DNA of 64,000 nt from Thalia democratica (GCA_965202585.1 OZ241834.1:682001-746000); one strand, 5' to 3'; numbered from the stretch's first letter, positions 1 to 47,200 are shown. Made by a program: numbers and translations. The notes: generated by a model from the letters alone, not told the origin.

Positions 1-3000
1 GATTAGGATGTTGGGACAATCATGGGTAGGCGAAGCTATTTCCGCACATACTTGTTTGGAATGCCGAAACCTCATTTTTCGACGGACCCGTTGATTAGGA
101 TGTTGGGACAATCATGGGTAGGCGAAGCTATTTCCGCACATACTTGTTTGGAATGCCGAAACCTCATTTTTCGACGGACCCGTTGATTAGGATGTTGGGA
201 CAATCATGGGTAGGCGAAGCTATTTCCGCACATACTTGTTTGGAATGCCCAAACCTCCTTCTTCGACGAATACGTTGATTAGGATGTTGGGACAATCATG
301 CGGTAGGCGAAGCTATTTCCGCACATACTTGTTTGAAATTCCCAAACCTCCTTTTTCGACGAATACGTTGATTAGGATGTTGGGACAATCATGGGTAGGC
401 GAAGCTATTTCCGCACATACTTGTTTGGAATGCCCAAACCTCATTTTTCGACGGACCCGTTGATTAAAATGCTGAGACAATCATGCGGTAGGCGAAGCTA
501 TTTCCGCACATACTGGTTTGGAATGCCCAAACCTCCTTTTTCGACGAACCTGTTGATTAGGATGTTGGGACAATCATGGGTAGGCGAAGCTATTTCCGTA
601 CATACTTGTTTGGAATGCCCAAACCTCATTTTTCGACGGATACGTTGATTAGGATGTTGGGACAATCATGGGTAGGCGAAGCTATTTCCGCACATACTTG
701 TTTGGAATGCCCAAACCTCCTTTTTCGACGAATACGTTGATTAGGATGTTGAGACAATCATGCGGTAGGCGAAGCTATTTCCGCACATACTTGTTTGGAA
801 TGCCCAAACCTCCTTTTTCGACGGATACGTTGATTAGGATGTTGGGACAATCATGGGTAGGCGAAGCTATTTCCGCACATACTTGTTTGGAATACCGAAA
901 CCTCATTTTTCGACGGACCCGTTGATTAGGATGTTGGGACAATCATGGGTAGGCGAAGCTATTTCCGCACATACTTGTTTGGAATGCCCAAACCTCATTT
1001 TTCGACGGACCCGTTGATTAGGATGTTGGGACAATCATGGGTAGGCGAAGCTATTTCCGCACATACTTGTTTGGAATGCCCAAACCTCCTTTTTCGACGA
1101 ATACGTTGATTAGGATGTTGGGACAATCATGCGGTAGGCGAAGCTATTTCCGCACATACTTGTTTGGAATGCCCAAACCTCCTTTTTCGACGAATACGTT
1201 GATTAGGATGTTTGGACAATCATGGGTAGGCGAAGCTATTTCCGCACATACTGGTTTGGAATGCCCAAACCTCCTTTTTCGACGGACCCGTTGATTAGGA
1301 TGTTGGGACAATCATGGGTAGGCGAAGCTATTTCCGCACATACTGGTTTGGAATGCCCAAAACTCCTTTTTCGACGGATACGTTGATTAGGATGTTGGGA
1401 CAATCATGCGGTAGGCGAAGCTATTTCCGCACATACTTGTTTGGAATGCCCAAACCTCCTTTTTCGACGAACCCGTTGATTAGGATGTTGAGACAATCAT
1501 GGGTAGGCGAAGCTATTTCCGCACATACTTGTTTGGAATGCCGAAACCTCATTTTTCGACGGACCCGTTGATTAGGATGTTGGGACAATCATGGGTAGGC
1601 GAAGCTATTTCCGAACATACTTGTTTGGAATGCCCAAACCTCATTTTTCGACGGATACGTTGATTAGGATGTTGAGACAATCATGCGGTAGGCGAAGCTA
1701 TTTCCGCACATACTTGTTTGGAATGCCGAAACCTCCTTTTTCGACGAATACGTTGATTAGGATGTTGGGACAATCATGCGGTAGGCGAAGCTATTTCCGC
1801 ACATACTTGTTTGGAATGCCGAAACCTCATTTTTCAACGGACCCGTTGATTAGGATGTTGGGACAATCATGGGTAGGCGAAGCTATTTCCGAACATACTT
1901 GTTTGGAATGCCCAAACCTCATTTTTCGACGGATACGTTGATTAGGATGTTGAGACAATCATGCGGTAGGCGAAGCTATTTCCGCACATACTTGTTTGGA
2001 ATGCCCAAACCTCCTTTTTCGACGAATACGTTGATTAGGATGTTGGGACAATCATGGGTAGGCGAAGCTATTTCCGCACATACTTGTTTGGAATGCCGAA
2101 ACCTCATTTTTCGACGGACCCGTTGATTAGGATGTTGGGACAATCATGGGTAGGCGAAGCTATTTCCGAACATACTTGTTTGGAATGCCCAAACCTCCTT
2201 TTTCGACGAATACGTTGATTAGGATGTTGGGACAATCATGCGGTAGGCGAAGCTATTTCCGCACATACTTGTTTGGAATGCCCAAACCTCGTTTTTCGAC
2301 GGATACGTTGATTAGGATGTTGAGACAATCATGGGTAGGCGAAGCTATTTCCGCACATACTGGTTTGAAATTCCCAAACCTCCTTCTTCGACGAATACGT
2401 TGATTAGGATGTTGGGACAATCATGGGTAGGCGAAGCTATTTCCGCACATACTTGTTTGGAATGCCCAAACCTCCTTTTTCGACGGACCCGTTGATTAGG
2501 ATGTTGGGACAATCATGGGTAGGCGAAGCTATTTCCGTACATACTTGTTTGGAATGCCCAAACCTCATTTTTCGACGGATACGTTGATTAGGATGTTGAG
2601 ACAATCATGCGGTAGGCGAAGCTATTTCCGCACATACTTCTTTGGAATGCCGAAACCTCCTTTTTCGACGAATACGTTGATTAGGATGTTGGGACAATCA
2701 TGGGTAGGCGAAGCTATTTCCGCACATACTGGTTTGGAATGCCCAAACCTCATTTTTCGACGGATACGTTGATTAGGATGTTGGGACAATCATGGGTAGG
2801 CGAAGCTATTTCCGCACATACTGGTTTGAAATTCCCAAACCTCCTTCTTCGACGAATACGTTGATTAGGATGTTGGGACAATCATGGGTAGGCGAAGCTA
2901 TTTCCGCACATACTTGTTTGGAATGCCCAAACCTCCTTTTTCGACGAACCCGTTGATTAGGATGTTGGGACAATCATGGGTAGGCGAAGCTATTTCCGAA

Positions 3001-3491
3001 CATACTTGTTTGGAATGCCCAAACCTCCTTTTTCGACGAATACGTTGATTAGGATGTTGGGACAATCATGCGGTAGGCGAAGCTATTTCCGCACATACTG
3101 GTTTGAAATTCCCAAACCTCCTTTTTCGACGGATACGTTGATTAGGATGTTGAGACAATCATGGGTAGGCGAAGCTATTTCCGCACATACTTGTTTGGAA
3201 TGCCCAAACCTCATTTTTCGACGGATACATTGATTAGGATGTTGGGACAATCATGGGTAGGCGAAGCTATTTCCGCACATACTTGTTTGGAATGCCCAAA
3301 CCTCCTTTTTCGACGGATACGTTGATTAGGATGTTGGGACAATCATGCGGTAGGCGAAGCTATTTCCGCACATACATGTTTGGAATGCCCAAACCTCATT
3401 TTTCGACGAATACGTTGATTAGGATGTTGGGACAATCATGGGTAGGCGAAGCTATTTCCGCACATACTTGTTTGGAATGCCCAAACCTCAT
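1..3491. repeat. Satellite array 1: ~38 tandem 92/93-bp units derived from the thumb-coding region of a non-LTR RT (RT sense on minus strand); runs off the window start
   Basis: GATTAGGATG recurs at 1, 93, 185 and onward. Units carry CATGGGTAGG (92 bp) or CATGCGGTAGG (93 bp). The reverse complement of the 93-bp unit translates to NKYVRK*LRLPHDCPNILINVFVEKGGLGIP. Confidence 0.97.
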
Positions 3492-3494
3492 AGG

Positions 3495-6400
3495 AAAGAT
3501 AATTGTAGAAATATGAAATTATTTTAATAAATGGTGTAGTTTTTTCTTTGCGTTTTCAGTTTATTCATACTTGATTATGGGGTAGCTTATATAATTGTTA
3601 GGTTGTTTATCAAAACTATAATTACTAAGATAATTTCCAAAATTGATACCTTTGTTTTTTACTTGCAATTAGCTGAAAATTGATAGAAAATATATCAGAG
3701 AGTATCAGCTTCATCAAAGCCTAATCGAAACACCTAAGAATAACAGCATTGGAAAGTTGATTGAAAAAATATGAAATTATTTTAATAAATGGTGTAGTGT
3801 TTTGTTGCGTTTTCAGTTTTTTTCTTACTTGATTATGGTGTATCTTTTATAATTGTTAAGTCGGTTATCGACACTTTAATTACTATAAGACTTCTAATAG
3901 TAATACCTTTGTTTTTCTAGTTGCATTTAGCTGACAATTATTAGAAAATATCTCATAGAGTATCAGCTTTATCAAAGCCCAGTCGAACCAGCTAAGAATG
4001 ACTGCATTGCAAAGATAATTGTAGATATATGAAATTATTTCGATAGATGGTGTAGTGTTTTGTTGCGTTTTCAGTGTTTTTCATACTTGATTATGGGGTA
4101 ATTTTTATAATTGTTAGGTCGTTTATAAACACTTTAAGTACTAAGATAATTTATAGAAGTGATATATTTGATTTTCTATTTGCATTCAGCCGAAAATTAA
4201 ATGAAATAATCTCTAAAAGTATTAGCTTTATCAAAGCCCAGTCAAACCAACTAAGAATGACTGCATTGCAAAGATAATTGTAGAAGTATGAAATTATTTT
4301 AATAAATGGTGTAGTGTTTTGTTGCGTATTTAGTTTTTTTAATACTTGATTATGGAGTAACTTTGATAATTGTTAAGTCGTTTATAAACGCTTTATTTAC
4401 TAAAATAATTTCTAAAAGTAATAACTTTGATTTTCTTGTTGCAATTAGCTGAAAATTATTAGAAAATATCTTATAGAATCTCAGCTTTATCAAAGCCCGG
4501 TCGAACCATCTAAGTATGACTGCATTGCAAAGATAATTGTAGATATATGAAATTATTTTAATAAATGGTGTAGTGTTTTGTTGCGTTTTCAGTTTTTTTC
4601 ATACTTGATTATGGGGTAAGTTTTCTAATTATTAGGTCGTTTATCAACATTTTAATCACTGTGATAATTGTAGAAGTATGAAATTATTTTAATAAATGGT
4701 TTAGTGTTTTGTTGCGTTTTCAGTGTTTTTCATATTTGATTATTGGGTAACTTTTATAATTGTTAGGTCGTTTATCAATGCATTATTTACCAAAATAATT
4801 TTTAAAAGTGATAACTTTGATTTTCTAGTCGCATTTAGCTGAAAATTATTAGAAAATATCTTATCTTATAGAATCTCAGCTTTATCAAAGCCAAGTCGAA
4901 CCAGCTAATAATGACTGCATTGAAAAGATAATTGTAAATATATGAAATAATTTGATTAATTGTGTAGTGTTTTCTTGCGTTTACAGTTTTTTTCATACTT
5001 CATTATGGGGTCACTTTTCTAAATATAAGGTCGTTTGTCAACACTTTTATTACTAGGATAACTTCTAATACTGATAACTTTGATTTTATAGTTGCATTTA
5101 GCTTATAATTATTATAAAATATATCTGAGAGTATCAGTTTTAACAAAACCCAGTCGAACCAGCTATTAATGACTGCATTGCAAAGATAATGGCAGAAATT
5201 TAAAATTATTTTAATAAATGGTGTACTGTTTTGTCGCGTTTTCAGTTTTTTTTTTTATACTTGATTATGGAGTAACTTTTATAATTGTTAGGTCGTTTAT
5301 CGACACTTTAATTACTAAGATATCTTCTTAAAGTGATACCTTTGTTTTTCTAGTTGCATTTAGCCGAAAATTATTAGAAATTATCTCTAAGAGCATTAGC
5401 TTTTTCAAAGCCCAGTCAAACCATCTAAGAATGACTGCATTGAAAATATAATTGTAGAAATATAAAATTATTTTAATAAATGGTGTAGTGTTTTGTTGCG
5501 TTTTCATTTTATTCATACTTTATTATGGTGTATCTAATATAAATGTTAGGTCGTTTATCAACACTTTAATTACTAAGATAACTTGTAAAATTGATAATTT
5601 TGATTTTATAGTCGCATTTAGCTGATAATTATTATAAAAAATATCTGAGAATTACAGTTTTATCAAAGCCGAGTTGAACCAGCTAAGAATGACTGCATTG
5701 CAAAGATAAAAATAAAAACAGAAATTTTTTTAATAAATGGTGTAGTGTTTTGTTGCATTTTCAGTTTTTTTCATACTTAATTTTTGGGTAACTTTTATAA
5801 TTGTTAGGTCGTTTCACAACACTTTAATTAATAAAATAACTTCTGGAAGTGATAACTTTGTTTTTCTAGTTGCATTTAGCTGAAGGTTATTAGAAATTAT
5901 CCTTAAGAGTATTAGCTTTTTCAAAGCCCAGTGGAACCATCTTAGAATGACTGCATTGCAAAGATAATCGTAGAAACTTAAAATTATTCTAATAAATGGT
6001 GTAGTATTTTGTTGCGTTTTCAGTTTTTTCATACTTGATTATGGGGTATATTTTATAATTGTTAGGTCGTTTATCAACGCTTTATTTACCAAAATAATTT
6101 CTAAAAGTGATAACTTTGATTTTCTTGTTGCAATTAGCTGAGAATTATTAGAAAATATTTTATCTTATAGAGTCTCAGCTTTATCGAAGCCCAGTCGAAC
6201 CAGCTAATAATGACTGCATTAAGAAAATAATTGTAGATATATGAAATTATTTTAATAAATGGTTTAGTGTTTTGTTACGTTTTCAGTGTTTTTCGTACTT
6301 GATTATGGGGTAACTTTTACAATTGTAGGTCGTTTATCAACACGTTAATTACTATGAAAACTTCTAAAAGTAATACCTTTGTTTTTCTAATTGCATTTAG

Positions 6401-7561
6401 CTGATAATTGATAGAAATATCTAAGAGAGTATCAGCTTTATCTAAGCCCACTCGAACCATCTAAGAATGACTGCATTGCAAAGATAATGGTAGAAATTTG
6501 AAATTATTTTAATAAATGGTGTAGTGTTTTTTTGCATTTTCAGTTTATTAATACTTGATTATGGGTAAATTTTATAATTGTTAGGTCGTTTCACAACACT
6601 TTAATTACTAATATAACTTCTAGAAGTATTAACTTTGTTTTTCTAGTTGCATTAAGCTGACAAATATTAGAAAATATCGTATCTTATAGAATCTCAGCTT
6701 TATCGAAGCCCAGTCGATCCAGCTAAGTATGACTGATTGCAAAGATAATTGTAGGAATATGAAATTGTTTTAATAAATGGTTTAGTGTTTTGTTGCGTTT
6801 TCAGTGTTTTTCATACTTGATTATGGGGTAACTTTTACAATTGTTAAGTCGTTTATCAACACTTAAATTACTATGAAAACTTCTTAAAGTCATACCTTTG
6901 TTTTTCTAGTTGCATTTCGCTGACAATTATTAGAAAATATCTCAGAGAGTATCAGCTTTATCAAAGCCCAGTCAAACCATCTAAGAATGACTGCATTGCA
7001 AAGATAATTGTAGAAATACGGAATTATTTTAATAAATGCTATAGTATTTTGTTGAGTTTTCAGTGTTTTTCATACTTGATTGTTGAGTAATTTTTACAAT
7101 TGTAAGTCGTTTATCAACACTTTAATTACTATAAAAACTTCTAAAGGTAATACCTTTGTTTTTCTAAATGCATTTAGCTGACAATTGATAGAAAATATCT
7201 CAGAGAGTATCAGCTTTATCTAAGCCCACTCGAACCATTTAAGAATGACTGCATTGCAAAGATAATTGTAGAAATTTAAAATTATTTTAATAAATGCTGT
7301 AGTTTTTTCTTTGCGTTTTCAGTTTCTTTATACTTGATTATTGGGTAACTATTCTAATTGTTAGGTCGTTTATCAACACTTTAATTACTAAGATAATTTA
7401 TAGAAGTGATATATTTGATTTTCTACTTGCATTTAGCCGAAAATTAATTGAAATTATCTCTAAAAGTATCAGCTTTATCAAAGCCCAGTCGAAAATCTAA
7501 GAATGACTGCATTCGAAGATAATTGTACAAGTATGAAATTATTTTAATAAATGGTGTAGTG
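3495..7561. repeat. Satellite array 2, left part: diverged ~260-bp AT-rich tandem units
   Basis: The motif GAATGACTGCATTGCAAAGATAATTGTAG recurs about every 260 bp (e.g. 3996, 4255). Monomers differ visibly by many substitutions and small indels. Confidence 0.95.
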
Positions 7562-11111: not shown

Positions 11112-11443
11112 ATGTGAAGGATAAGGTTCATGACTGCTTGCAAGTTTTTCTAATCTGATTCTTAATCAGTAAAATAGAGCCTTAAGTCACCTCTTCTATA
11201 AATATCTAGATTAGATCTTTTGCTCAAGATGCTGATAACTGAACTGAAAGCTTTCTCAACATTATAGCTAAAAGGAAAAGCTATAAACAACAGTCTTAAT
11301 TCCTCTCAAATGATTGGATACTTTTGCCTTAGTTTTTGTTAAGTCCAAAAGCTTTCATATCGTTATTTGGAAGAACTTTCTTTAAGTTCAAGGTCAGTTT
11401 GTAAGTCGTTTACTTCAAAAGTATCTGCCTCGAAAGGATCCAT
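11112..11443 (-). pseudogene. hAT transposase C-terminal (dimerisation) remnant with several stops
   Basis: Minus-strand translation ...ESFWT*QKLRQKYPII*EELRLLFIAFPFSYNVEKAFSSVISILSKRSNLDIYRRGDLRLYFTD..., then KLASSHEPYPSH after a frameshift. This matches the FPSSYLVERGFS...RGDLRL...HPSH end of Charlie/ZBED-type transposases. Confidence 0.88.
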
Positions 11444-12097
11444 ATTTTTATCTATCTGATAGCTTTTTTGTGTCAAATCTAAATTTAACTACTTAATATG
11501 TTAAAATTGTTAAAAATTCCAGATTTTTTCTAAGTTATTTTTTTGCCTAAATTGTCAAATTTCAGAATTTTCCAGGTTTCTAGGTAAATTGGCAACTCTG
11601 TATAGTTTTATTTCTTAGTCTAACTTAGTGACTTTTCAAAAAAAAAAAAAAACTGGAAATATCATGAGGTGATAGTTAATAATAAATAACATAGATTTTT
11701 ACAAACCATTTATGATCCCAAATAACATATATGTCAGGTTATAAAATAGTGAGAGGGATTTAAATCGTCTATGATCTATGTAATTGTTAAATAAGGAAAT
11801 ATTTACTTGAAAGTAGGAGTCATAAGCACTTGATTTTTTTTTCTATCTGTTACATAAATAAAAGAAACTTTTTTTTTCAAGTTTCACCTCAGGGTCAAAT
11901 AAATAATAGCAAGCTAAAATTAGTAAAATAGCAAGAAAAAAAGTAAAAATCTTATGACAGCCCAAAATTTTAAAATCGCCCTCTTTTCGCCCTCTTACTA
12001 GTTATCGCCCACCCTTTCGCCCCCTTACTAATTATCGCCCCCCAAATTACTAAAATCGCCCCCAGGGGGGCGATATCGCCCACTTTGGGAAACCCTG

Positions 12098-15000
12098 GTG
12101 TAGTGTTTTGTTGCGTATTCAGTTTTTTTAATACTTAATTATGGGGTAAATTTTATAATTGTTAAGTCATTTAGAAACGCTTTATTTACCAAAATAATTT
12201 CAAAAAGTGATAACTTTGATTTTCTTGTTGCAATTAGCTGAAAATTATTCGAAAATATCTTATAGAATCTCAGCTTTATGAAAGCCCAGTCGAACCATCT
12301 AAGAATGACTGCATTGCAAAGATAATTGTAGATATATGAAATTATTTTAACAAATGGTCTAGTGTTTTGTTGCGTTTTCAGTTTTTTTCATACTTGATTA
12401 ACGCGTAACTTTTCTAATTATTAGGTCGTTTATCAACACTTTAATTACTGTGAAAACTTCTAAAAGCAATAACTTTGATTTTAAAGTTACATTTAGCTGA
12501 TAATTATAGGAAATCATATCTGAGAGTATCAGCTTTATAAAAACCCAGTCGAACCAGCTAAGAATGACTGCATTGTAAAGATAATGGTAGATATATAATA
12601 TTATGTTAATAAATGGTGTAGTGTTTTGTTGCGTTTTCAGTTTTTTTTATACTTGATTATGGGGTAACTTTTATAATTGTTAGGTTGTTTATCAATACTA
12701 TAATTACTAAGATAACTTCTAAAACTGATACCTTTGTTTATTCTAGTTGCGTTTAGCTGAAAATTAATTAAAATTATCTCTAAGAGTATCAGCTTTACTA
12801 AAGCCCAGTTGAATTATCTAAGAATGACTGCATTCTAAAGATAACTGTAAAAATATAAAATTATTTAATAAATGGTGTAGTGTTTTGTTGCGTTTTCAGT
12901 TTATTCATACTTTATTATGGGGTAACTTTTATAATTGTTAGGTCGTTTCACAACACTTTAATTAATAAGAAATCTTCTAGAAAATATAACTTTTTTTTTA
13001 TAGTTGCATTTAGCTGAAAGTTATTAGAAATTATCTTTAAGAGTATTACCTTTTTCAAAGCTCAGTCGAACCATCTTAGAATGAACGCATTAAAAAGATA
13101 ATTGTAGAAATATGAAATTATTTTAATAAATGGTTTAGTGTTTTGTTGCGTTTTCAGTGTTTTTCATACTTGATTATGGAGTAACTTTTACAATTGTAGG
13201 TCGTTTATCAACACTTTAATTACTATGAAAACTTTTAAAAGTAATACCTTTGTTTTTCTTGGTGCATTTAGCTGACAATTGATAAAAAATATCTCAGAGA
13301 GTATCAGCTTTATCTAAGCCCACTCGAACCATCTAAGAATGACTGCATTGCAAACATAATTGTAGAAATTTAAAATTATTTTAATAAATGGTTTAGTATT
13401 TTGTTGCGTTTTCAGTTTTTTCATACTTGATTATGGGGTAACTTTTATAATAGTTAGGTCGTTTATCAACGCTTTATTTACCAAAATATTTTTTAAAAGT
13501 GATAACTTTGATTTTCTAGTCGCATTTAGCTAAAATTTTTAGAAAATATCTTATCTTATAGAATCTCAGCTTTATCGAAACCCAGTCGAACCAGCTAATA
13601 ATGACTGCATTGAAAAGATAATTGTAGAAATATGAAATTATTTTAATATATGGTTTAGTGTTTTGTTTCGTTTTCAGTGTTTTTCATACTTGATTATGGG
13701 GTAACTTTTACAATTGTAGGACGTTTATCAACACGTTAATTACTATGAAAACTTCTAAAAGTACTACGTTTGTTTTTTTAATTGCATTTAGCTGATAATT
13801 GATAGAAAATATCTCAGAGAGTATCAGCTTTATCTAAGCCAATTCGAACCATCTAAGAATGACTGCATTGCAAAGATAATTGTAGAAATATGAAATTATT
13901 TTAATAAATAGTGTAGTGTTTTTATGCGTTTTCAGTTTATTAATACTTGATTATGGGTAACTTTTATAAATGTTAGGTCGTTTCACAACACTTTAATTAC
14001 TAAGATAACTTCTAGAAGTGATAACTTTGTTTTTTAGTTGCATTTAGCTGACAATTATTAGAAAATATCGTATCTTATAGAATCTCAGCTATATCGAAGC
14101 CCATTCGATGCAGCTAATAATGACTGATTGCAAAGATAATTGTAGAAATATGAGATTATTTTAATAAATGCTTTAGTGTTTTGTTGCGTTTTCAGTGTTT
14201 TTCATACTTGATTATGGGGTAACTTTTACAATTGTTAAGTCGTTTATCAACACTTTGATTACTATAAAAACTTCATAAAGTCATACCTTTGTTTTTCTAG
14301 TTGCTTTTAGCTGACAATTATTAGAAAATATCTCAGAGAGTATCAGATTTATCAAAGCCCAGTCAAACCATCTAAGAATGACTGCATTGCAAAGATAATT
14401 GTAGATATATGAAATAATTTGATTAATGGTGTAGTGTTTTCTTGCGTATACAGTTTTTTTTCATACTTGATTATGGGGTCACTTTTCTAAATATTAGGTC
14501 GTTTTTCAACAATTTTTTACTAGGATAACCTCTAATACTGATAACTTTGATTTTATAGTTGCATTTAGCTTACAATTATTAGAAAATATATCTGAGAGTA
14601 TCAGCTTTAACAAAACCCAGTCGAACCAGCTATTAATGACTGCATTGCAAAGATAATGGTAGAAATTTAAAATTATTTTAATAAATGGTGTACTGTTTTG
14701 TTGCGTTTTCAATTTTTTTTATACTTGATTATGGGGTTACTTTTATAATTGTTAGGTCGTTTATCAACACTTAAATTACTAAGATATCTTCTAGAAGTGA
14801 TACCTTTGTTTTTCTAGTTGCATTTAGCTGAAAATTATTAGAAATTATCTCTAAGAGTATTAGCTTTATCTAAGCCCAGTCAAACAATCTAAGAATGACT
14901 GTATTGCAAACATAATTGTAGAAATATGAAATAACTTTAATAAATGGTGTAGTGTTTTGTTGCGTTTTCAGTTTATTCATTCTTGATTATGGGGTAGCTT

Positions 15001-17182
15001 TTATAATTGTTAGGTCGTTTATAAACGCTTTATTTACTAAGATATCTTCTAAAAGTGATAACTTCGAGTTTCTAGTTGTATTTAGCCGATAATTATTAGA
15101 AAACATCTCATAGAAACTCAGCTTTATTGAAGCTCAGTCGAACCAGCTAAGAATGACTGCATTGCAAGGATAATTGTAGAAATATAAAACTATTTTAATA
15201 AATGGTGTATTATTTTATTGCCTTTTCAGTTTTTTTCAAACTTGATAATGGGGTAACTTTTATAATAGTTAGGTTGTTTATCAACGCTTTAATTACTAAG
15301 ATAACTTCTAAAAGTGATACCTTTGTTTTTCTAGCTGCATTTGGTTGAAAATTGTTAGAAAATATATCTGAGATTATCAGCTTAGGAAAGCCCAGTCGAA
15401 CTAACTAAGAATCACTGCATTGCAAAGATAATTGTAGAAATATAAAATTATTTTAATAAATGTTGTAGTTTTTTCTTTGCGTTTTCAGTTTATTCATACT
15501 TGATTATGGGGTAGCTATTTTAATTGTTAAGTCGTTTATAAACGCTTTATTTACCAAAATAATTTCTTAAAGTGATAACTTTGATTTTCTAGTTGCATTT
15601 AGCTAAAAATTAATAGAAAATATCTTATCTTATAGAATCTCAGCTTTATTGAAGCCCAGTCGAACCAGCTAAGAATGACTTCATTGCAAAGATAATTGTA
15701 GAAATATGAAATTTTTGTAATAAATAGTGCAGTTTTTTTTCTGTGTTTTCAGTTTTTTTCATACTTGATTATGGGGTAACTTTTGTAATTGTTAGGTCGT
15801 TTATCAACACTTTAATTACTAAGATATCTTCTAGAAGTGATACCTTTGTGTTTCTAGTTGCATTTAGCCGAAAATTAATTGAAATTATCTCAAAAAGTGT
15901 AAGCTGTATTAAAGCCCAGTCGAACCATCTAAGAATGACTGAATTGAAAAGATAATTGTAGAAGTATGAAATTATTTTAATAAATGGTGTAGTGTTTTGT
16001 TGCGTATTCAGTTTATTTCATACTTCATTATGGGGAAACTTTTATTATTGTTAGGTCGTTTATAAACGCTTTATTTAACAAAATAATTTCTAAAAGTGAT
16101 ACCTTTGATTTTCTTGTTGCAATTAGCTGAAAATTATTAGAAAATATCTTATACAATCTCAGCTTTTTCAAAGGTCAGTCGAACCATCTATGAATGACTG
16201 CATTGCAAAGATAATTGTAGATATATGAAATTAATTCGATAGATTGTGTAGTGTTTTGTTGCGTTTACAGTTTTTATCAAACTTGATTATGGGGTAACTT
16301 TAATAATTGTTAGGTCGTTTATCAACATTTTTGTTACTAAGATAACTTCTAAAAGTGATAACTTTTATTTTATAGTTGCATTTAGCTGATAATTATTAGA
16401 AAATATATCTGAGAGTATCAGCTTTATAAAAACTCATTCGAACCAGCTAAGAATGACTGCATTGCAAAGATAATGGTAGAAATATGAAATTATTTTAATA
16501 AATGGTGTAGTGTTTTGTTGCGTTTTCAGTGTTTTTCATACTGATTATGGGGTAATTTTTACAATCGTTAAGTCGTTTATCAACACTTTATATACCAAGA
16601 TAACTTTTAAAAGTGATACCTTTGTTTTTCTAGTTGCATTTAGCTGAAAGTTAATTGAAATTATATCTAAGAGTATCAGCTTTATCAAAGCCCAGTCAAA
16701 CCATCTAAGAATGACTCCATTGCAAAGATAATTGTAGAAATATAAAATTATTTTAATAAATGGTGTAGTGTTTTGTTGCGTTTTCATTTTATTCATACTT
16801 GATTATGGTGTATCTTTTATAATTGTTAGGTCGTTTATCAACACTTTAATTACTAAGATAACTTCTCAAATTGATACCTTTGATTTTAAAGTTGCATTTA
16901 GCTCATAATTTTTAGAAAATATATCTTAGAGTATCAGTTTTATCAAAACCCAGTCGAACCAGCTAAGAATGACTGCATTGCCAAGATAATGGTAGAAATA
17001 TGAAATTATTTTAATAAATGGTGTAGTGTTTTGTTGCGTTTTCAGTGTTTTTCATACTTATTTATGGGGTAAATTTTATTATTGTTAGGTCGTTTCACAA
17101 CCCAGAAGTAATAACTTTGTTTTTCTAGTTGCATTTAGCTGAAAATTATTAGAATTTATCTTTAAGAGTAAAATGGTGTAGT
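12098..17182. repeat. Satellite array 2, right part (~260-bp units)
   Basis: Same monomer as 3495-7561. It resumes in register at the TSD GTGTAGTG and ends with a truncated unit near 17100-17182. Confidence 0.95.
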
Positions 17183-38533: not shown

Positions 38534-41149
38534 TTATACGCTTTACCTTGATAGACTACAAACACATAATTTAAATTTTAAGAACATAGAAAACTTAACC
38601 TCATTACTTTTTTTAAACTAGGTTAAGGTTAAACTACAATTAATTTACTATCCATTTCTGAATCTTATAAAATAATTTATATTCTTAAGTGTAAAAACAA
38701 GAACATTATATTTATATATCATTTCAATAATGATGTTCGGCATAATTCTTTGTTTTATCGTTCAGTTAAAAATTGGAACAAACTTTAAAATAATTTAGTG
38801 TCTTGCAAAAAAGTTAAACATTTTCGATTAAAGTTAAAAACTTAGGTTTGCTGTTCTTTTATCAACAATTGATTTAATCCATAGTTCGATTATATTAGCA
38901 GCGCTTTTCCTCTATGATTAATAAAACCCTTTACAATGTGTTCGTTAAGATTTACTAGGCCTGTCTATTCTTAATGTGCTTGGGGCTTATAATTTCATTG
39001 CTAGTCAATGCATTTAATCTTTTAATGTTTTATTGAAATATTTTGTATATCTTGATATTGTACGTTTGTAATTGTATCGATTATGCCTTGGCAATGCAAT
39101 AAATGATAATAAGATCTTAATTCAACATATTTCATAGAATTGCAACTTAAATACATACATTATTAATGATGACAAATAACTATATTATAACCGGACTAAA
39201 GCACTATATATTTTTTTGTAAACAATTAAATATTTTGAAGGTTGATATCAAAAATTAATAAGTAGGTTGATGCCAAAGTCTTTGTTTGTTTTCACTTAAT
39301 TGGATTTTAAATGATTGAAGTCTGGTAAGAAGTTGATGCTAATAGAGGAAAAAGTAATACTTTAACGAATGATGAAAAGTCCCCCATAAGGGTCTTCTTT
39401 ACAACGTTGTTTCAACTATTTTAGTACAACCCTAATATCAATGCGACACACTTGGTAATTTTTACTCAACTGGCACTTATGCTAATAATCTTAATCAATC
39501 AAATTGACAACAAACGTTTTAGATTTCGTTAACTTTCGAATATTCTAAATGCTTAAATATATTGCTATGAACCTAAAATTCTTAAACTACACGCGTACTG
39601 ATCAGTATGTACTTAAAGTAAAGTGTAAAACACTAACAACGAATTAATGTACTCCTAAATAATAACAACTAATATACCATTATTTTTCTTTGTACATAAA
39701 GAATACTGTTTAAATTTATTATTATTATATATTCCAGTTAACTTGTATCGCAATGATCTGTATTAGTTTACGCTTTAATTTATATTTTGAATAGTTTATT
39801 CTTAAATATGCTTTTAATTATATTTTAGACAACCCGCTTACTAAAAAAGTCGCTTGATAAACTATTTTCAATAATTATTTATATATATATAATCAGTATG
39901 TATTAGTGCTTATTGTATTAATCAGTATGTAAGCACTTAAAGCTTAAAATTGTAATTAATTTAGTTTTACTTTTATTGAAACATTATGAACCCAAATTAA
40001 ATTTTAAATAGTAAATATGAAGATATTGGTAGTATAAAATGAAGATATAAAGTGATTTACCAAAAATAATTTTGCACATATTAATTAATAAATTTTCAAT
40101 CTTTTAACTTCAATTTTTAATTAGAATAATACATTACATAGTATATAGTAATAATACCAATAAATTAAATAGAATTTAACATTATATTTTAACAAATTTA
40201 TGGTTTCAGAAAACTTTAAATTGCTTAAACAAAATGCTCTTTGCAGCACATAAAACAAATAAATTATCCCAAATAATATTTACATTCATCTGTTCCAACA
40301 GGTAATTGAAACTGAACTTTACAGCAGGTGTGCCAACCTTTTGCTTATATGTGAAAAGAATGAAAATTGTTGAACTAAGTAACAATCATATGAAATTTAT
40401 GTCTTAATAAAATTACTTTGTAATATAAGAAGTAGTTTGTAGTTTAAACTTTTATTAAAGTTATTAATTGCTGAATATTATAGAAATTATGTCAATAAAG
40501 CATGATTATCTTACTAAGGGCTTAAAAGACAAATCATTAGTTATACAAGTGTTACCAGATTGTTAAATAATAAAGTAATAAATAATAAGATTGTCTCCTT
40601 GGTTATTTAATCAACAAACTTTTATCTAAAAAAGTATGTATGTATGAAATAAACAAATTTAAAGATACATCAATGGTATATTTATAATAATCAAAAATAG
40701 ACGACTTTTTATAGAAAAACACGCTAAACTATTTTTAAAATATTACTAAGCTTTACCACCATAAGTCTATACAATTTAACAAACGTCAAAAAAGTTTATT
40801 TGAACTTGTGTAAAAAGATCTTTGAAACTTAGGATACAAAGAACTATTAACATTGAAAGTAATAATTAAACAAATTGCTGTAGATCATTAAAAAAGGAGA
40901 GATTTTTCAGTAAACGTTTCCATTTTTTCTTAATTTTAAACTATCATTAATAATTTATGATATTAAAGTAAACTTATTTTGTAGTTACTTTAAAAATATA
41001 AACTATTTTTTAAATTAAAAAATCACGTAACTTAATTTTAACATCATAAAATGTGACTAAAGTATTTAGAAATATTGTGTGTGATTTATAAATGATCTCC
41101 ATCGAGATAGTTTTCAAAAATGATTCGTCAAAGTTTAAACATCATTTCA

Positions 41150-41935
41150 TGATTCTTTAAAGAGACAAAGCACCTGCCCAGTCTCCCATGAACTCCACAT
41201 TCGTGGAAGATGTTGTTTCCATTTGTTCACGAGTGAGATGTCATATTTTCCACTTTGCCGTCGTGAGCCTTGTTGAGGTCTTTGATGAAATCAGCAAAGA
41301 AATCTGTCCAATCTGCATATAGTGTCATGCTTGGAATGTGTAAACCTCATTTTGAAACGGATACATTGATTAAGATATTAGGACAATCAGGCGAAGCCAT
41401 CTCCGCACACTCTTGTTTAAAAGGCGGTCAAAATTTCCCATCACGTTTTGCTGGTCTCCGTGAAGTTGAGTTGATTTTTGTCGTGAGGATCTCCCTGATT
41501 TCAGCGGGCAGCGACTGATTTTTTTGAGTTTACTCTACATGTCTTCCAAACTGATTTTTTGTCTCCTGCAGTGTTAATAGAGCTCCAAGATATTTATACT
41601 CGACATGCATTCCATCTGAGGGATTTCAACACCATTAATTATGTAAGATTCTGCCATGTTGTCAATGGTGTATTTGCTTATGGGAAAACAAAGTGGCATA
41701 TTGCGCTTTTTACTGTGTTTATTTGTAGGCTTAACCTCAGTAATTTTTTTAACTAAGATTTCGATTTTTTGGTTGATTTGTGAGTTGTTATTAGCAAAAA
41801 TCACGAGCGCGTCAGCAAATTTATGGCCAACTTTTGTTTTTCCAAAGGAAACTTCATCTTGATTCGTGATAGAGTTCAGGGCTTCGTCTAGCATCAGGTT
41901 GAATAAAAGTGGGGAGAGGGGATCTCCCCAAAAAA
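41150..41935 (-). pseudogene. Non-LTR (R2-like) RT relic, motif 4 to thumb
   Basis: GDPLSPLLFNLMLDEALNSI (motif 4), HKFADALVIF (motif 5, normally FADD), EYKYLG after a frameshift (motif 7), then NKSVRRWLRL/DCPNILINVSVSK*GLHIPS (thumb). Confidence 0.9.
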
Positions 41936-41994
41936 CTTAATCCGGCTAGTTAACAGAATCAAACCGAAAACTATCTAAACTGGAGCATGTACAA

Positions 41995-43094: not shown

Positions 43095-44215
43095 ACAAGT
43101 CATAGACAAACTGACTAAAGAAGGTATCTCAAAGATGGATACTAAGTTGTTGATGAAATGCTTCCTAGATGAAAGAAAAATGCCTCTTGAAAGGTTTAAC
43201 ATGGTTCTGATCCCAAAGCATGAGAGGACAAATCATCCGAACTACTTTATTTTGTCGATAGGGCTAAATTTATTCATTGATATGTATCTATGACAAAAAG
43301 AGCTCTGGAATGCTGAAAGTTATCCCAAATAAAAACAGATAGCTTGCAGCGTGGATTTAAAGCTAAGGAAGGAATCTTGGCGAGGGCAGCGAAGAAAGTA
43401 ATAAAAGTATGTCAGTATCATAAATTAAAAATATATCTGAAGTTCGACAGTGAGAATCACCTGAGGCTGACGGAGGTGCTCAACTGGCACCAACTCAACA
43501 CTCAACTGAAAGATAATTACAAACATGTACAACAGTTCATGTTTGAGAACTTGGTTAAAGAATTTCAATAGGATCTTGTAAGACATAGTGAAGAAAGTAA
43601 TCAACGAAGGAAGAAGTAAATAGCATGTTTAGACCTGAAGAAAGAATTCGACTCGGTTAATCACCTAAAGCTGGTTGAACTCGTCTGGAATACTAAGAAA
43701 AATAAAGGTTCAGACAACGAATTACTAACATGTATAGAGGTAACAGCTTATTCCTGAAAACAGGAGAACAAATCCCGATAGAAAAAGCTACGAAAAAATC
43801 AAATGTCGCCTACGCTCTTCAACCTTACCCTTAACGAAGGCAGAAAATTATCAATATCATGGATAGATCTGAAGAAATCAATCGACTCGGTCAATAATCA
43901 TAAACTGATTGAAGTCCTCAACTCGACTGGCATTCCAAGAAAGATAACTCGACAAATTACTAACATGTATGGTGGAAACAGCTTATATTTGAGAACTGAT
44001 AAAAAAATTCCAATTAAACGTGGGGTACTCCAAGGCGATGTAAATAACAATGATCAATCTTAAATGAAGCGCTTAGAGGTTTCACGGAAGGAATTAAATC
44101 AAAACTACTTTCGCAGTGAACACGGACTTTGGAAGAACTTTGGAAGGTTATAAACAGGGAACCGAAAAACCGATCCACCTGAACATCTGGAAAACCTCGA
44201 GTTCACCACCAACAA
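43095..44215 (+). pseudogene. Non-LTR RT relic, motifs 1-6, scrambled, with a duplicated motif 3-4 segment
   Basis: NMVLIPK, LQRGFKAKEG, IACLDLKKEFDSVNHLKL...ITNMYRGNSLFLKTGEQIPIEK, SPTLFNLTLNE, ISWIDLKKSIDSVNNHKLIEVLNSTGIPRKITRQITNMYGG...IPIKRGVLQGD, NEALRG, IHLNIWKT. Confidence 0.9.
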
Positions 44216-44299
44216 TCATTATAAGTTATTAAAGATCGTGAAGAACAAGTTTATACTTATTTTTTGTAACTTTATTAAAACCGGTTGAAACTATCAAAG

Positions 44300-47200
44300 G
44301 TAAATTTGATAAAATGAATTACTTATGAGTAAATGGAGTACCTTCGTAAAGTGTCGATAGTGTAAACCATCTCAAGATGGTCGAAGTATTGAATTCGCGT
44401 GGAGTATGCAAAATGACTCGTATAATAGCGCATATGAGGTATAGGTGCAATTCTGTCACGCAAAGAACGAATAGCAATAGAACGGGGAAAGAGTTCCAAA
44501 AGAAACATGGATTGTAACAGGAACCAAAATTGACCAACTTTAAACCAGTTGACCCACTCAAGGGTAAGAGTATATTTGAGAAAATGAATTACTTATGAGT
44601 AAATGGAGTACCTTCGTAAAGTGTTCGATAGTGTCAACCATCTCAAGATAGTCGAGGTGTTGAATTCGCGTGGGGTACGAAAAATGACTCGTATAATAGC
44701 GCAAATGTACTGAGGTAACGGTGCATTTCTGCAAATAACAGATAGCAATAAAAGGCGGAAAGAGCTCCAATATAAACATGGATTGTAACAGGAAGCAAAA
44801 ATTGACCAACTTTAAACCAGTTGACCCACTCAAGGGTAAGAGTATATTTGAGAAAATGAATTACTTATGAGTAAATGGAGTACCTTCGTAAAACGTTCGA
44901 TAGTGTCAACCATCTCAAGATAGTCGAGGTGTTGTATTCGGGTGGGGTACGAAAAATGACTCGTATAATAGCGCAAATGTACCGAGGTAAAAGTGCATTT
45001 CTGCAAAGAACAGATAGCAATAAAAGGCGGAAAGAGCTCAAATATAAACATGGATTGTAACAGGAAGCAAAGTTGACCAACTTTAAACCAGTTGACCCAC
45101 TCAAGGGTAAGAGTAAATTTGAGAAAATGAATTACTTATGAGTAAATAAAGTACCTTCGTAAAGTGTTCGATAGTGTCAACCATCTCAAGATAGTCGAGG
45201 TGTTGAATTCGCGTGGGGTACGAAAAATGACTCGTATAATAGCGCAAATGTACCGAGGTAACGGTGCATTTCTGCAAATAACAGATAGCAATAAAAGGCG
45301 GAAAGAGCTCCAATATAAACATGGATTGTAACAGGAGGCAAAATTGACCAACTTTAAACCAGTTGACCCACTCAAGGGTAAGAGTAAATTTGATAAAATC
45401 AATTACTTATGAGTAAATGGAGTACCTTCGTAAAGTGTTCGATAGTGTCAACCATCTCAAGATAGTCGAGGTGTTGAATTTGCGTGGGGTACGAAAAATG
45501 ACTCGTATAATAGCGCAAATGTACCGAGGTAACGGTGCATTTCTGCAAAGAACAGATAGCAATAAAAGGCGGAAAGAGCTCAAATATAAACATGAATTGT
45601 AATAGGAAGCAAAAATTGACCAACTTTAAACCAATTGACCCACTCAAGGGTAAGAGTAAATTTGAGAAAATGAATTACTTATGAGTAAATGGAGTACCTT
45701 CGTAAAGTGTTCGATAGTGTCAACCATCTCAAGATAGTCGAAGTATTGAATTCGCGTTGAGTAGGCAAAATGACTCGTATAATAGCGCATATGAGGTATA
45801 GGTGCAATTCTGTCACGAAAAGAACGAATAGCAATAGAACGGGGAAAGAGTTCCAAAAGAAACATGGATTGTAACAGGAGGCAAAATTGACCAACTTTAA
45901 ACCAGTTGACCCACTCAAGGGTAAGAGTAAATTTGAGAAAATGAATTACTTATGAATAAATGGAGTACCTTCGTAAAGAGTTCGATAGTGTCAATCATCT
46001 TAAGATAGTCGAGGTGTTGAATTCGCGTGGGGTACGAAAAATGACTCGTATAATAGCGCAAATGTACTGAGGTAACGGTGCATTTCTGCAAAGAACAGAT
46101 AGCAATAAAAGGCGGAAAGAGCTCCAATATAAACATGGATTGTAACAATAAGCAAAGTTGACCAACTTTAAACTAGTTGACCCACTCAAGGGTAAGAGTA
46201 AATTTGAGAAAATGAATTACTTATGAGTAAATGGAGTACCTTCGTAAAGTGTTCGATAGTGTCAATCATCTCAAGATAGTCGAGGTGTTGAATTCGCGTG
46301 GGGTACGAAAAATGACTCGTATAATAGCGTATATGAGGTATAGGTGCAATTCTGTCACGAAAAGAACGAATAGCAATAGAACGGGGAAAGAGTTCCAAAA
46401 GAAACATGGATTGTAACAGGAGGCAAAATTGACCAACTTTAAACCAGTTGACCCACTCAAGGGTAAGAGTAAATTTGAGAAAATGAATTACTTATGAATA
46501 AATGGAGTACCTTCGTAAAGAGTTCGATAGTGTCAATCATCTCAAGAGAGTCGAGGTGTTGAATTCGCGTGGGGTACGAAAAATGACTCGTATAATAGCG
46601 CAAATGTACCGAGGTAACGGTGCATTTCTGCAAAGAACAGATAGCAATAAAAGGCGGAAAGAGTTCGAATATAAACATGGATTGTAACAATAAGCAAAGT
46701 TGACCAACTTTAAACCAGTTGACCCACTCAAGGGTAAGAGTAAATTTGAGAAAATGAATTACTTATGAATAAATGGAGTACCTTCGTAAAGTGTTTGATA
46801 GTGTCAACCATCTCAAGATAGTCGAGGTGTTGAATTCGCGTGGGGTACGAAAAATGATTCGTATAATAGCGCAAATGTACCGAGGTAACGGTGCATTTCT
46901 GCAAAGAACAGATAGCAATAAAAGGCGGAATAGCTCCAATATAAACATAGATTCTAACAATAAGCAAAGTTGACCAACTTTAAACCAGTTGACCCACTCA
47001 AGGGTAAGAGTAAATTTGAGAAAATGAACTACTGATGAGTAAATGGAGTACCTTCGTAAAGTGTTCGATAGTGTCAACCATCTCAAGATAGTCGAGGTGT
47101 TGAATTCGCGTGGGGTACGAAAAATGACTCGTATAATAGCGCAAATGTACCGAGGTAACGGTGCATTTCTGCAAAGAACAGATAGCAATAAAAGGCGGAA

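What the first reader, a model, noticed from the sequence alone, without database searches (positions are those of the whole stretch)
1..3491. Satellite whose monomer is exactly 31 codons of a retrotransposon RT thumb
Seen: the reverse complement of the 93-bp unit reads NKYVRK*LRLPHDCPNILINVFVEKGGLGIP, and consecutive 93-bp units stay in frame. Known: VR.WL.LP.D.P...(I/L)......GGLGIP is the conserved thumb segment of R2-like non-LTR RTs. In the units I inspected the Trp codon is TAG, so the stop appears to pre-date amplification and the array is unlikely to code. Inference: a small, precisely bounded piece of RT coding DNA seeded a homogeneous satellite.
Basis: partly seen in the sequence, partly recalled or inferred. 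Interest (0 to 1): 0.85.

Follow-up and report, generated by a model that had tools for sequence, protein, structure and literature searches.

The report
Tandem array born from R2-like RT
A 25-kb non-coding tandem repeat whose 92/93-bp unit is a 31-codon piece of the reverse-transcriptase thumb of a dead R2-type retrotransposon, with a relic of that element still attached at one end: a clean but not new example of a jumping-gene fragment becoming satellite DNA.

Summary
The array is real and comes from an RT, but it is not a uniform 93-bp, in-frame satellite.

- **Extent:** window 1-3491 is the right end of one 24,933-bp array (C10:660,559-685,491) of 270 units. A unit 23-mer occurs nowhere else in the 802-Mb assembly.
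- **Unit length:** only about a quarter of units are 93 bp. Most are 92 bp through a 1-bp deletion, so consecutive units do not stay in frame.
- **Source:** Dispersed, decayed copies of an RLE-type (R2-superfamily) LINE carry the same segment once, at about 82-84% DNA identity, with TGG where the array has TAG.
- **Link to R2:** that relic ORF aligns to R2Bm residues 718-791. The satellite peptide aligns to the thumb of this genome's own 28S-inserted R2 (pairwise E 6e-7).
- **Attached relic:** the array's left end runs in phase into a relic of the same family (thumb, linker, CCHC, RLE). Its terminal unit alone keeps TGG.
- **Origin:** unit ends coincide with two TGTTT microhomologies 93 bp apart.

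It is a new member of a known kind, a satellite derived from a LINE ORF. Two further arrays in this genome (271 bp and 211 bp) also consist of R2 RT coding pieces. Other first-stage notes of this scan flagged the same array and the 271-bp one.

The parts
1..3491 (-). Right-hand 3.5 kb (about 38 units) of the 24.9-kb 92/93-bp array. The parental RT sense is on the minus strand. The last unit is cut off at 3491, where an unrelated 258/259-bp satellite begins.
   Evidence: TRF period 92 with 277/369 higher periods; unit lengths; translation; whole-array extent C10:660,559-685,491.
40549..41937 (-). Decayed copy of the same parent LINE family, of a different subfamily from the relic at the array's left end.
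   Evidence: blastn collinear with relics L018, L012, L011, L013 and L034; tblastn to the R2 ORF aa 385-577; protein hit at C10:723,388-723,657.
41333..41418 (-). Single-copy counterpart of the satellite unit inside that relic. It is 76% identical over the blastn alignment with an 8-bp gap (82.6% over ungapped columns) and has the TGG-type codon (GCCAT on the + strand).
11197..12103 (+). Piece of the parent family's RT lying upstream of the thumb, in inverted orientation relative to the array, between two blocks of the 258-bp satellite. It could be a displaced remainder of the progenitor or another relic.
   Evidence: blastn to L018 1925-2444 (77%) and 3090-3296 (85%).

Best explanation
Window 1-3491 is the end of a single-locus, non-coding tandem array of 24.9 kb and 270 units. 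Its unit is a 93-bp internal segment (31 codons, NKYVRKWLRLPHDCPNILIN..GGLGIP) of the RT thumb of an extinct RLE-type (R2-superfamily) non-LTR retrotransposon.

Shown:
- The segment occurs once in each dispersed relic of that element, inside the RT-to-CCHC-to-RLE reading frame.
- The array joins, in phase and in the same orientation, a 1.3-kb relic that carries thumb, linker, CCHC knuckle and RLE.
- Unit boundaries fall at two TGTTT microhomologies 93 bp apart in the parent.

Inferred:
- A microhomology-mediated tandem duplication in a resident dead copy made a dimer. The cause may have been replication slippage or unequal exchange.
- Unequal crossing-over and segmental duplication within the array then expanded and homogenised it.
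- Along the way a TGG-to-TAG change and a 1-bp deletion (the 92-bp form, now 73% of units) spread through the array.
- The array has no coding capacity, and no function is indicated.
For: - **Array anatomy:**. Mean pairwise identity is 94.7%, with length classes 92/93/94.
- **Single locus:** a unit 23-mer has 262 forward and 0 reverse hits in the genome, and a backwards-read control has none. The 100 hits listed all lie at C10:660,717-669,961, and 270 units were counted locally at C10:660,559-685,491.
- **Parent copies:** 81-84% DNA identity, E 1e-17 to 1e-22. They read FDRLFNKYVRKWLRLPHDCPNILING... with TGG.
- **Parent architecture:** the relics are collinear with an R2 ORF across RT, thumb, CCHC and RLE (L011 E 6e-43, L013 E 7e-34).
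- **Reference R2:** that ORF matches R2Bm 8GH6 at E 1.7e-90 and interrupts the 28S gene.
- **Relic ORF to R2Bm:** residues 718-791, E 1e-4.
- **Satellite peptide to the R2 thumb:** aa 575-598, E 6e-7.
- **Left-flank relic:** collinear with five parent copies up to the first junction.
- **Terminal unit:** it alone keeps TGG.
- **Junction:** TGTTT microhomology at both parental breakpoints, and an ungapped 93-bp parental span.
- **Composition:** array GC is 45% against 31% for the window.
- **Independent data:** the flank and array units are also seen in public runs, including a marine plankton metagenome.
Against: - The flanking terminal unit is no closer to the array consensus (82.8%) than other relics are (80-83%). 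At several sites it shares subfamily-specific states with relics L011 and L010 that the satellite lacks.
- All 16 of its differences lie in its left 71 nt, and its last 22 nt are identical to the satellite. So the flank copy may not be the direct progenitor. The join could be a later homologous recombination or conversion event.
- The right side of the presumed progenitor is missing, because the array is cut off by an unrelated satellite at 3491.
- No read or contig bridged the relic-array junction in independent data.
- The monomer peptide alone has no hit in Pfam or PDB searches.
Confidence: 0.85

Rival explanations
1. Same RT origin, but the array did not arise in the relic that now flanks it. 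It was born in another copy of the family, closer to the family's ancestral sequence, and was joined to this relic later. The join would be homologous recombination or gene conversion within the shared 93-bp segment.
For: Unit 1 is 82.8% identical to the array consensus, no better than unrelated relics. The satellite keeps GGLGIP and ..ACGGATAC.. states that unit 1, L011 and L010 have lost. Differences are confined to the left 71 nt of unit 1, which suggests a breakpoint.
Against: An in-phase, same-orientation join exactly at a unit boundary is also what in-situ birth predicts. Long concerted evolution of the array, with the edge unit left out, can produce the same pattern. No other array or dimer of this unit exists in the genome.
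Confidence: 0.3
2. The founding duplication was made by the element's own reverse transcriptase. A backward template switch at the TGTTT microhomology during target-primed reverse transcription would have inserted a copy that already carried a tandem thumb duplication.
For: The junction shows microhomology. Three separate arrays in this genome are built from R2-type RT coding pieces. One relic (L003/L004) carries a separate partial tandem duplication of the same segment. That R2 RT performs template jumping is from my own knowledge and was not tested here.
Against: Microhomology is equally typical of replication slippage and of microhomology-mediated repair. Nothing here distinguishes an RNA-level event from a DNA-level one. 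The arrays are old and their founders are lost.
Confidence: 0.1
3. The array is maintained for a function, for example as a source of antisense or small RNAs against R2-type elements (a 'retroelement memory' locus), or as a structural chromosomal repeat.
For: Several RT-derived arrays cluster in one subterminal region. Homogeneity is high at 94.7%.
Against: No RNA run holding the sequence was found. Identity to the dead parent is only about 82%, and there is no DNA similarity to the intact R2 copies, which makes it a poor guide for silencing. Homogeneity is expected from unequal exchange alone.
Confidence: 0.05
4. The array encodes a repetitive protein, or the resemblance to an RT is chance.
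For: The ancestral unit is a multiple of three. The plus strand has stop-free runs of up to 121 codons.
Against: There is a stop in 266/269 units on the RT strand, and 73% of units are frameshifting 92-mers. DNA-level E-values to parent copies are 1e-17 to 1e-22, and homology continues into the flank.
Confidence: 0.01

Closest known systems
LINE-ORF-derived satellites: chicken HinfI/SCR1 (CR1 3'UTR plus part of ORF2), hamster PROsat and harbour-seal Pvc20 (L1 ORF2), as listed in the review PMC9659126
   Same: The tandem-repeat monomer contains a fragment of a non-LTR retrotransposon's RT-encoding ORF and is non-coding after amplification.
   Different: Here the parent is an RLE-type, R2-superfamily element, and the whole unit is one 31-codon thumb segment. 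The array is a single 25-kb locus still attached to a relic, and the breakpoints with their microhomology are readable. A literature search found no R2-derived satellite.
R2Bm protein (PDB 8GH6, 8IBW), residues about 773-801 (..AVGQWLRLPADVPKAYYHAAVQDGGLAIP)
   Same: This is the protein segment homologous to the satellite unit, with the VRxWLxLPxDxP...GGLxIP motif. It lies between thumb residues L732/K733 (PMC10499050) and the CCHC knuckle.
   Different: The satellite copy is a dead fragment (TAG, frameshifts) from a lineage only about 30% identical to R2 in this region. The exact thumb/linker boundary was not found in the papers read.
TE-to-satellite transitions from non-coding TE parts (Ogre 3'UTR satellites, cetacean common satellite from the L1 3' end, Drosophila 18HT from HeT-A/TART; PMC9659126)
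   Same: The general process is the same: a TE fragment is tandemly duplicated, expanded and homogenised.
   Different: According to the review, those cases mostly start from repeats or UTRs already present in the TE. Here an ordinary unique coding segment was the seed.
Tandem TE arrays formed by repeated insertion into the same target (double-insertion model; from my own knowledge, McGurk and Barbash 2018)
   Same: Site-specific non-LTR elements can form tandem arrays.
   Different: Such units carry the element's 3' end and the target site. This unit is purely internal, roughly 1 kb from the 3' end, so that model does not fit.

Membership tests
TE-derived satellite / tandem array | Head-to-tail array of homogeneous monomers | tested here: met
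   270 units with mean pairwise identity 94.7%.
TE-derived satellite / tandem array | The monomer is homologous to a segment that occurs once per copy in a dispersed transposable element | tested here: met
   Relics on C10, C9 and C1007 hold it once at 81-84% identity, with flanking element sequence on both sides.
TE-derived satellite / tandem array | Direction of derivation is TE to satellite: the segment is an integral, conserved part of the TE protein | tested here: met
   The segment aligns to R2Bm and to this genome's 28S-inserted R2 thumb. The parents have TGG where the array has TAG.
TE-derived satellite / tandem array | Satellite-scale abundance: many loci or very large blocks | tested here: not met
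   There is one 24.9-kb locus in 802 Mb. It is better described as a single-locus tandem array than as a major satellite.
R2-superfamily (RLE-type) non-LTR retrotransposon, as the parent element | RT followed by thumb, linker, CCHC knuckle and C-terminal restriction-like endonuclease on one frame and strand | tested here: met
   tblastn of the R2 ORF is collinear on the relics: aa 336-887 on L011 (E 6e-43) and aa 232-887 on L013 (E 7e-34). CAFCKNK...H...C and KKPDIVF motifs are present in relic ORFs. In the flank relic the matches are aa 569-605, 641-710 and 785-902. Pfam support is only weak (zf-RVT, E 0.017).
R2 in the strict sense | Site-specific insertion in the 28S rRNA gene | tested here: not met
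   There are no rRNA matches around the parent relics or in the window. The intact reference R2 (L022 in L035) does interrupt the LSU rRNA gene.
R2 in the strict sense | Phylogenetic placement within the R2 clade rather than R4, NeSL, CRE, Utopia and others | not tested
   No reference set of RLE clades was available. The only evidence is that R2Bm is the best PDB hit, with 26-31% identity to the genome's R2 copies.
Protein-coding tandem-repeat gene | Open reading frame maintained across units | tested here: not met
   There is a stop in 266/269 units, and 92-bp units shift the frame. The longest run on the RT strand is 80 codons.
Tandem array by repeated site-specific insertion | The unit contains the element's 3' end and target-site sequence | tested here: not met
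   The unit is a purely internal 93-bp thumb segment. The relic's linker, CCHC and RLE occur only once, at the left flank.

The most novel reading that the evidence does not exclude
In this genome, coding pieces of R2-type reverse transcriptases have turned into tandem arrays at least three separate times: the 92/93-bp, 271-bp and 211-bp arrays. Two of them overlap the same WLxLPxDxP thumb motif, although they come from lineages with no DNA similarity to each other. One relic carries a further partial duplication of that segment. This could reflect a specific mechanism rather than chance. One candidate is RT template jumping at microhomologies during target-primed reverse transcription, seeding internal duplications. 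Another is retention of such arrays as RNA sources against R2.
Probability: 0.1. Interest if true: 0.7.

Novelty: new member of a known kind. Interest (0 to 1): 0.4.

Why it matters
Most satellites have lost all trace of their origin. Here the seed, its reading frame, the breakpoints with their microhomology, an attached relic, a terminal unit with the ancestral codon, and the later spread of a stop codon and a 1-bp deletion can all be read from one locus. That makes it a useful worked example of satellite birth from unique coding DNA. It is also the first example I could find with an R2-superfamily parent. It does not change current understanding: satellites derived from TEs, and from LINE ORFs, are established. 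The recurrence of RT-derived arrays in this genome is the one aspect that might repay further study.

Tried and rejected
- **Short-peptide searches:** Pfam hmmscan of the 30/31-aa monomer peptide found no family at E<=10. phmmer against PDB sequences found nothing at E<=10. The peptide is too short, so I went through the parent copies and a pairwise test instead.
- **Relic ORFs in Pfam:** only weak or noise hits.
- **Intact parent copy:** none was found. The best own-genome hits all carry stops, and the long intact ORFs are only 26-31% identical.
- **258-bp satellite as part of the parent:** no similarity to the parent.
- **Shared origin with the 271- and 211-bp arrays:** no DNA similarity to this array.
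- **Expression:** no RNA run holds the stretch. This says little either way.
- **Read laying on the left junction:** the flank and array units were recovered separately, but no contig bridges them. The tool warns that its depths are not copy numbers.
- **Thumb boundaries:** a residue-level thumb/linker boundary for R2Bm was not stated in five papers. The 'thumb' label therefore rests on position. The segment lies 45-70 residues after L732/K733, which PMC10499050 assigns to the thumb. It also lies before the point (about aa 624-630 of the R2 ORF) where alignments to A-clade R2 proteins break, which probably corresponds to the post-thumb insertion described in PMC12180492.
- **Literature:** a search for R2-derived satellites found none.
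- **Rejected readings:** coding, chance resemblance and the repeated-insertion model are rejected (see rival explanations and membership tests).

Full report
**1. The observation**

Window 1-3491 is a tandem array. TRF gives period 92 with higher periods 277 and 369 and 94-95% matches. Splitting at a fixed anchor gives 36 unit intervals in the window, 24 of 92 bp and 12 of 93 bp. The two forms differ by one base: CATGCGGTAGG in the 93-mer and CATGGGTAGG in the 92-mer.

Because two-thirds of the units are 92 bp and the two lengths are irregularly interspersed, consecutive units do not stay in frame. The longest stop-free run on that strand is 80 codons.

**2. Extent of the array**

- The window is G000:C10:682,001-746,000.
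- Fetching upstream sequence shows the array starts at C10:660,559 and ends at C10:685,491. That is 24,933 bp and 270 units: 197 of 92 bp, 69 of 93 bp and 3 of 94 bp.
- A unit 23-mer with up to one mismatch occurs 262 times forward and 0 times reverse in the 802-Mb assembly, and a backwards-read control has none. The listed hits lie inside the array, and the total is close to the 270 units counted locally. It is therefore one locus, not a genome-wide satellite.
- Mean pairwise identity is 94.7%. There is no strict higher-order repeat, but identity rises weakly at lags of 80, 110, 30 and 127 units, which points to segmental duplication inside the array.
- Array GC is 45% against 31% for the window.

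**3. The parent element**

A DNA search of the same genome with three units found single, non-tandem matches of 77-96 bp at 81-84% identity on C10, C9 and C1007 (E 1e-12 to 1e-17; 1e-17 to 1e-22 with local blastn). On the strand corresponding to the array's minus strand these loci read ...FDRLFNKYVRKWLRLPHDCPNILINGYVAKGDLSISN... and ...KFDGLFNRCVRKWLCLPHNCPNILINR... within a 118-aa ORF. All carry TGG (GCCAT on the plus strand) where the array has TAG.

Downstream ORFs contain a CAFCKNK...H...C knuckle and a KKPDIVF motif. All copies found are broken by stops, and no intact member of the family was seen.

**4. What the parent is**

The genome has intact ORFs that are distantly related to the relics (26-31% identity). 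One of them (L022, 908 aa) has the following properties:
- It has Pfam RVT_1 at aa 253-505.
- It matches the Bombyx R2 protein 8GH6 at E 1.7e-90 over RT, thumb, CCHC and RLE.
- It sits inside a 28S gene, where the LSU rRNA model is split across 7.9 kb. It is therefore a bona fide R2.

tblastn of this ORF is collinear on the parent relics from the RT through the RLE: aa 336-887 on L011 (E 6e-43) and aa 232-887 on L013 (E 7e-34). The 118-aa relic ORF has R2Bm as its best PDB hit (residues 718-791, E 1e-4).

The satellite's own 30-aa stop-free piece found nothing in Pfam or PDB searches. In the pre-specified pairwise test it aligns to the R2 ORF at aa 575-598: LRLPHDCPNILINVFVEKGGLGIP against LKLPNDFPSAMIHAGIRFGGLGIP, 12/24 identical, E 6e-7. 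The matching R2Bm stretch is WLRLPADVPKAYYHAAVQDGGLAIP.

No rRNA lies near the parent relics. I therefore call the parent an RLE-type, R2-superfamily LINE, not R2 in the strict sense.

**5. The 'thumb' label**

Wilkinson et al. (PMC10499050) place R2Bm L732/K733 in the thumb, followed by a linker and the CCHC finger. The unit corresponds to R2Bm residues about 771-801. It lies before the point where alignments to vertebrate A-clade R2 proteins break. That break probably corresponds to the post-thumb insertion described in PMC12180492. The label is a positional inference. I did not find a stated residue boundary.

**6. The left end of the array**

From about C10:659,327 to 660,651 the sequence is a relic of the same family, collinear with five other copies. 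Read on the minus strand it runs through thumb, linker, CCHC, RLE and the C-terminus. tblastn to the R2 ORF hits aa 569-605, 641-710 and 785-902 in order.

The relic's own copy of the segment (unit 1, C10:660,559-660,651) is in phase with the array and reads NKYVRKWLCLPHDCFNILINSYVAKGDLDIPN. It is the only unit with TGG. The other states are TAG 264, TAA 2 and GAG 2. The stop is therefore older than the bulk expansion but is absent from the edge copy.

At the right end the array is cut within a unit at window 3491, where an unrelated 258/259-bp satellite begins.

**7. Breakpoints**

In the parents the unit spans 93 bp without gaps. It is preceded by ...(A/G)TGTTT|GGAATG and ends ...CTTGTT(T/A)|AAAGAGG. 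The array junction is CTTGTTT|GGAATG, so the two breakpoints share TGTTT. The 93-bp ancestral length is simply the spacing of these microhomologies. Its divisibility by three has a one-in-three prior and no coding meaning. The parents have the CATG/CGTGCGG form, so the 93-mer is ancestral and the 92-mer is derived.

**8. In-situ birth or later joining**

- Unit 1 is 82.8% identical to the array consensus. That is no closer than other relics (80-83%).
- Unit 1 shares subfamily states with L011 and L010 (for example ..GCGACATAAC..) that the satellite lacks. The satellite keeps the conserved GGLGIP, which those relics have lost.
- All 16 differences lie in the left 71 nt of unit 1, and its last 22 nt equal the satellite.

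This pattern fits two histories. One is in-situ duplication followed by long concerted evolution that left out the edge unit. The other is homologous recombination or conversion between an array born in another copy and this relic. I favour in-situ birth at about 0.6 to 0.3. The RT origin holds under both.

**9. Independent data**

Public runs contain the sequence. One run has a 660-nt contig identical to the flank (L036 300-597), together with array units at much higher word depth. Two other coded organisms and a marine plankton metagenome hold array units at 95-100% identity. No contig bridges the junction, the best holder may be the source sample, and the tool warns that its depths are not copy numbers. 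No RNA run was found.

**10. Context**

- The 271-bp array at window 44,300-64,000 runs on to about C10:758,964. It reads ...LRKVFDSVNHLKIVEVLNSRGVPSKITRIIAQMYRGNGAFL, which is R2 ORF aa 333-377 at 62-73% amino-acid and 70-75% DNA identity. An R2-like relic lies at its left edge, at 43,102-44,565.
- A 211-bp array on C10:3.46-3.48 Mb, C1007 and C9:0.70 Mb reads R2 aa 514-590 at about 65% identity and includes the same thumb motif.
- Neither array shares DNA similarity with the 92/93-bp array. RT coding pieces therefore became tandem arrays at least three times in this genome, mostly within the first few Mb of contigs C9 and C10.

**11. Comparison with known cases and verdict**

Satellites derived from TEs are well documented, including some from LINE ORF2: HinfI/CR1, PROsat and Pvc20 from L1 (PMC9659126). 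My searches found no R2-derived case.

The repeated-insertion model does not fit, because the unit lacks the element's 3' end. A coding role is excluded by the stops and frameshifts.

The finding is a new member of a known kind and a good worked example, but it does not change current understanding. Interest 0.4.

Noticed in passing
window 44300-64000 (continues to about C10:758,964): The 271-bp array is also built from R2 RT coding sequence. Each unit reads ...LRKVFDSVNHLKIVEVLNSRGVPSKITRIIAQMYRGNGAFL, which is aa 333-377 of the genome's 28S-inserted R2 (62-73% amino-acid, 70-75% DNA identity). A second piece of the unit matches another part of an R2 copy (L029 2904-3010). A unit 24-mer has 122 genome hits, nearly all at this locus.
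   Followed up: partly
window 43102-44565 (+): R2-like RT relic (aa about 212-406 of the R2 ORF) abutting the left edge of the 271-bp array. This is the same relic-plus-array layout as at the 92/93-bp array.
   Followed up: partly
L010 37-6300 (C1007); L034 7514-10000 (C10:3,459,500 to beyond 3,480,500); C9:701-703 kb: A third RT-derived array of 211-bp units reads KMSWSNEINNISTSPLKTYHKMEVLRTHLIQKILYETTHEEVSHIALKSLYTEIRIAVRN..QPNDYPSAMIHA. This is R2 aa 514-590 at about 65% identity and overlaps the same WLxLPxDxP thumb motif. A unit 24-mer has 240 genome hits.
   Followed up: partly
L003 1501-1630 and L004 1448-1577 (C1007:10,009; C10:3,457,999): These relic copies carry a partial tandem duplication of about 50 bp of the same thumb segment. 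They read NKHVWRWLPNDCPNIL followed by KYVRKWLRLPHDCPNILINSYVAKGDL. This is a dimer-like state with different boundaries from the 93-bp unit, or a junction between two subfamilies.
   Followed up: no
window 3495-7561 and 12096-17095; also L008 and L013 (C9:1.162-1.165 Mb): A 258/259-bp AT-rich satellite (81-83% matches) truncates the 92/93-bp array. It recurs next to another relic of the parent family on C9, but has no similarity to the element itself.
   Followed up: partly
L035 132-8981 (C79:91,132-99,981): An rDNA unit whose 28S gene is interrupted by an apparently intact R2 (908-aa ORF). It is followed within 1 kb by U2 and U5 snRNA genes (Rfam 138.8 and 79.8 bits), which suggests that snRNA genes are linked to the rDNA repeat.
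   Followed up: no
C10:660,559-685,491 (array as a whole): Rare unit variants recur at a spacing of 7,382 bp (80 units), for example at 670,555/677,937 and 671,016/678,398. Identity peaks at lags of 80, 110, 30 and 127 units, which points to recent large segmental duplications inside the array.
   Followed up: partly
public runs X4-X9, X11-X13; X9 laid: Array words occur in several marine and marine-plankton metagenomes. One 123-nt contig differs from the array by a single base. The host, called a pelagic tunicate in another agent's note, is thus detectable in environmental DNA through this repeat.
   Followed up: no
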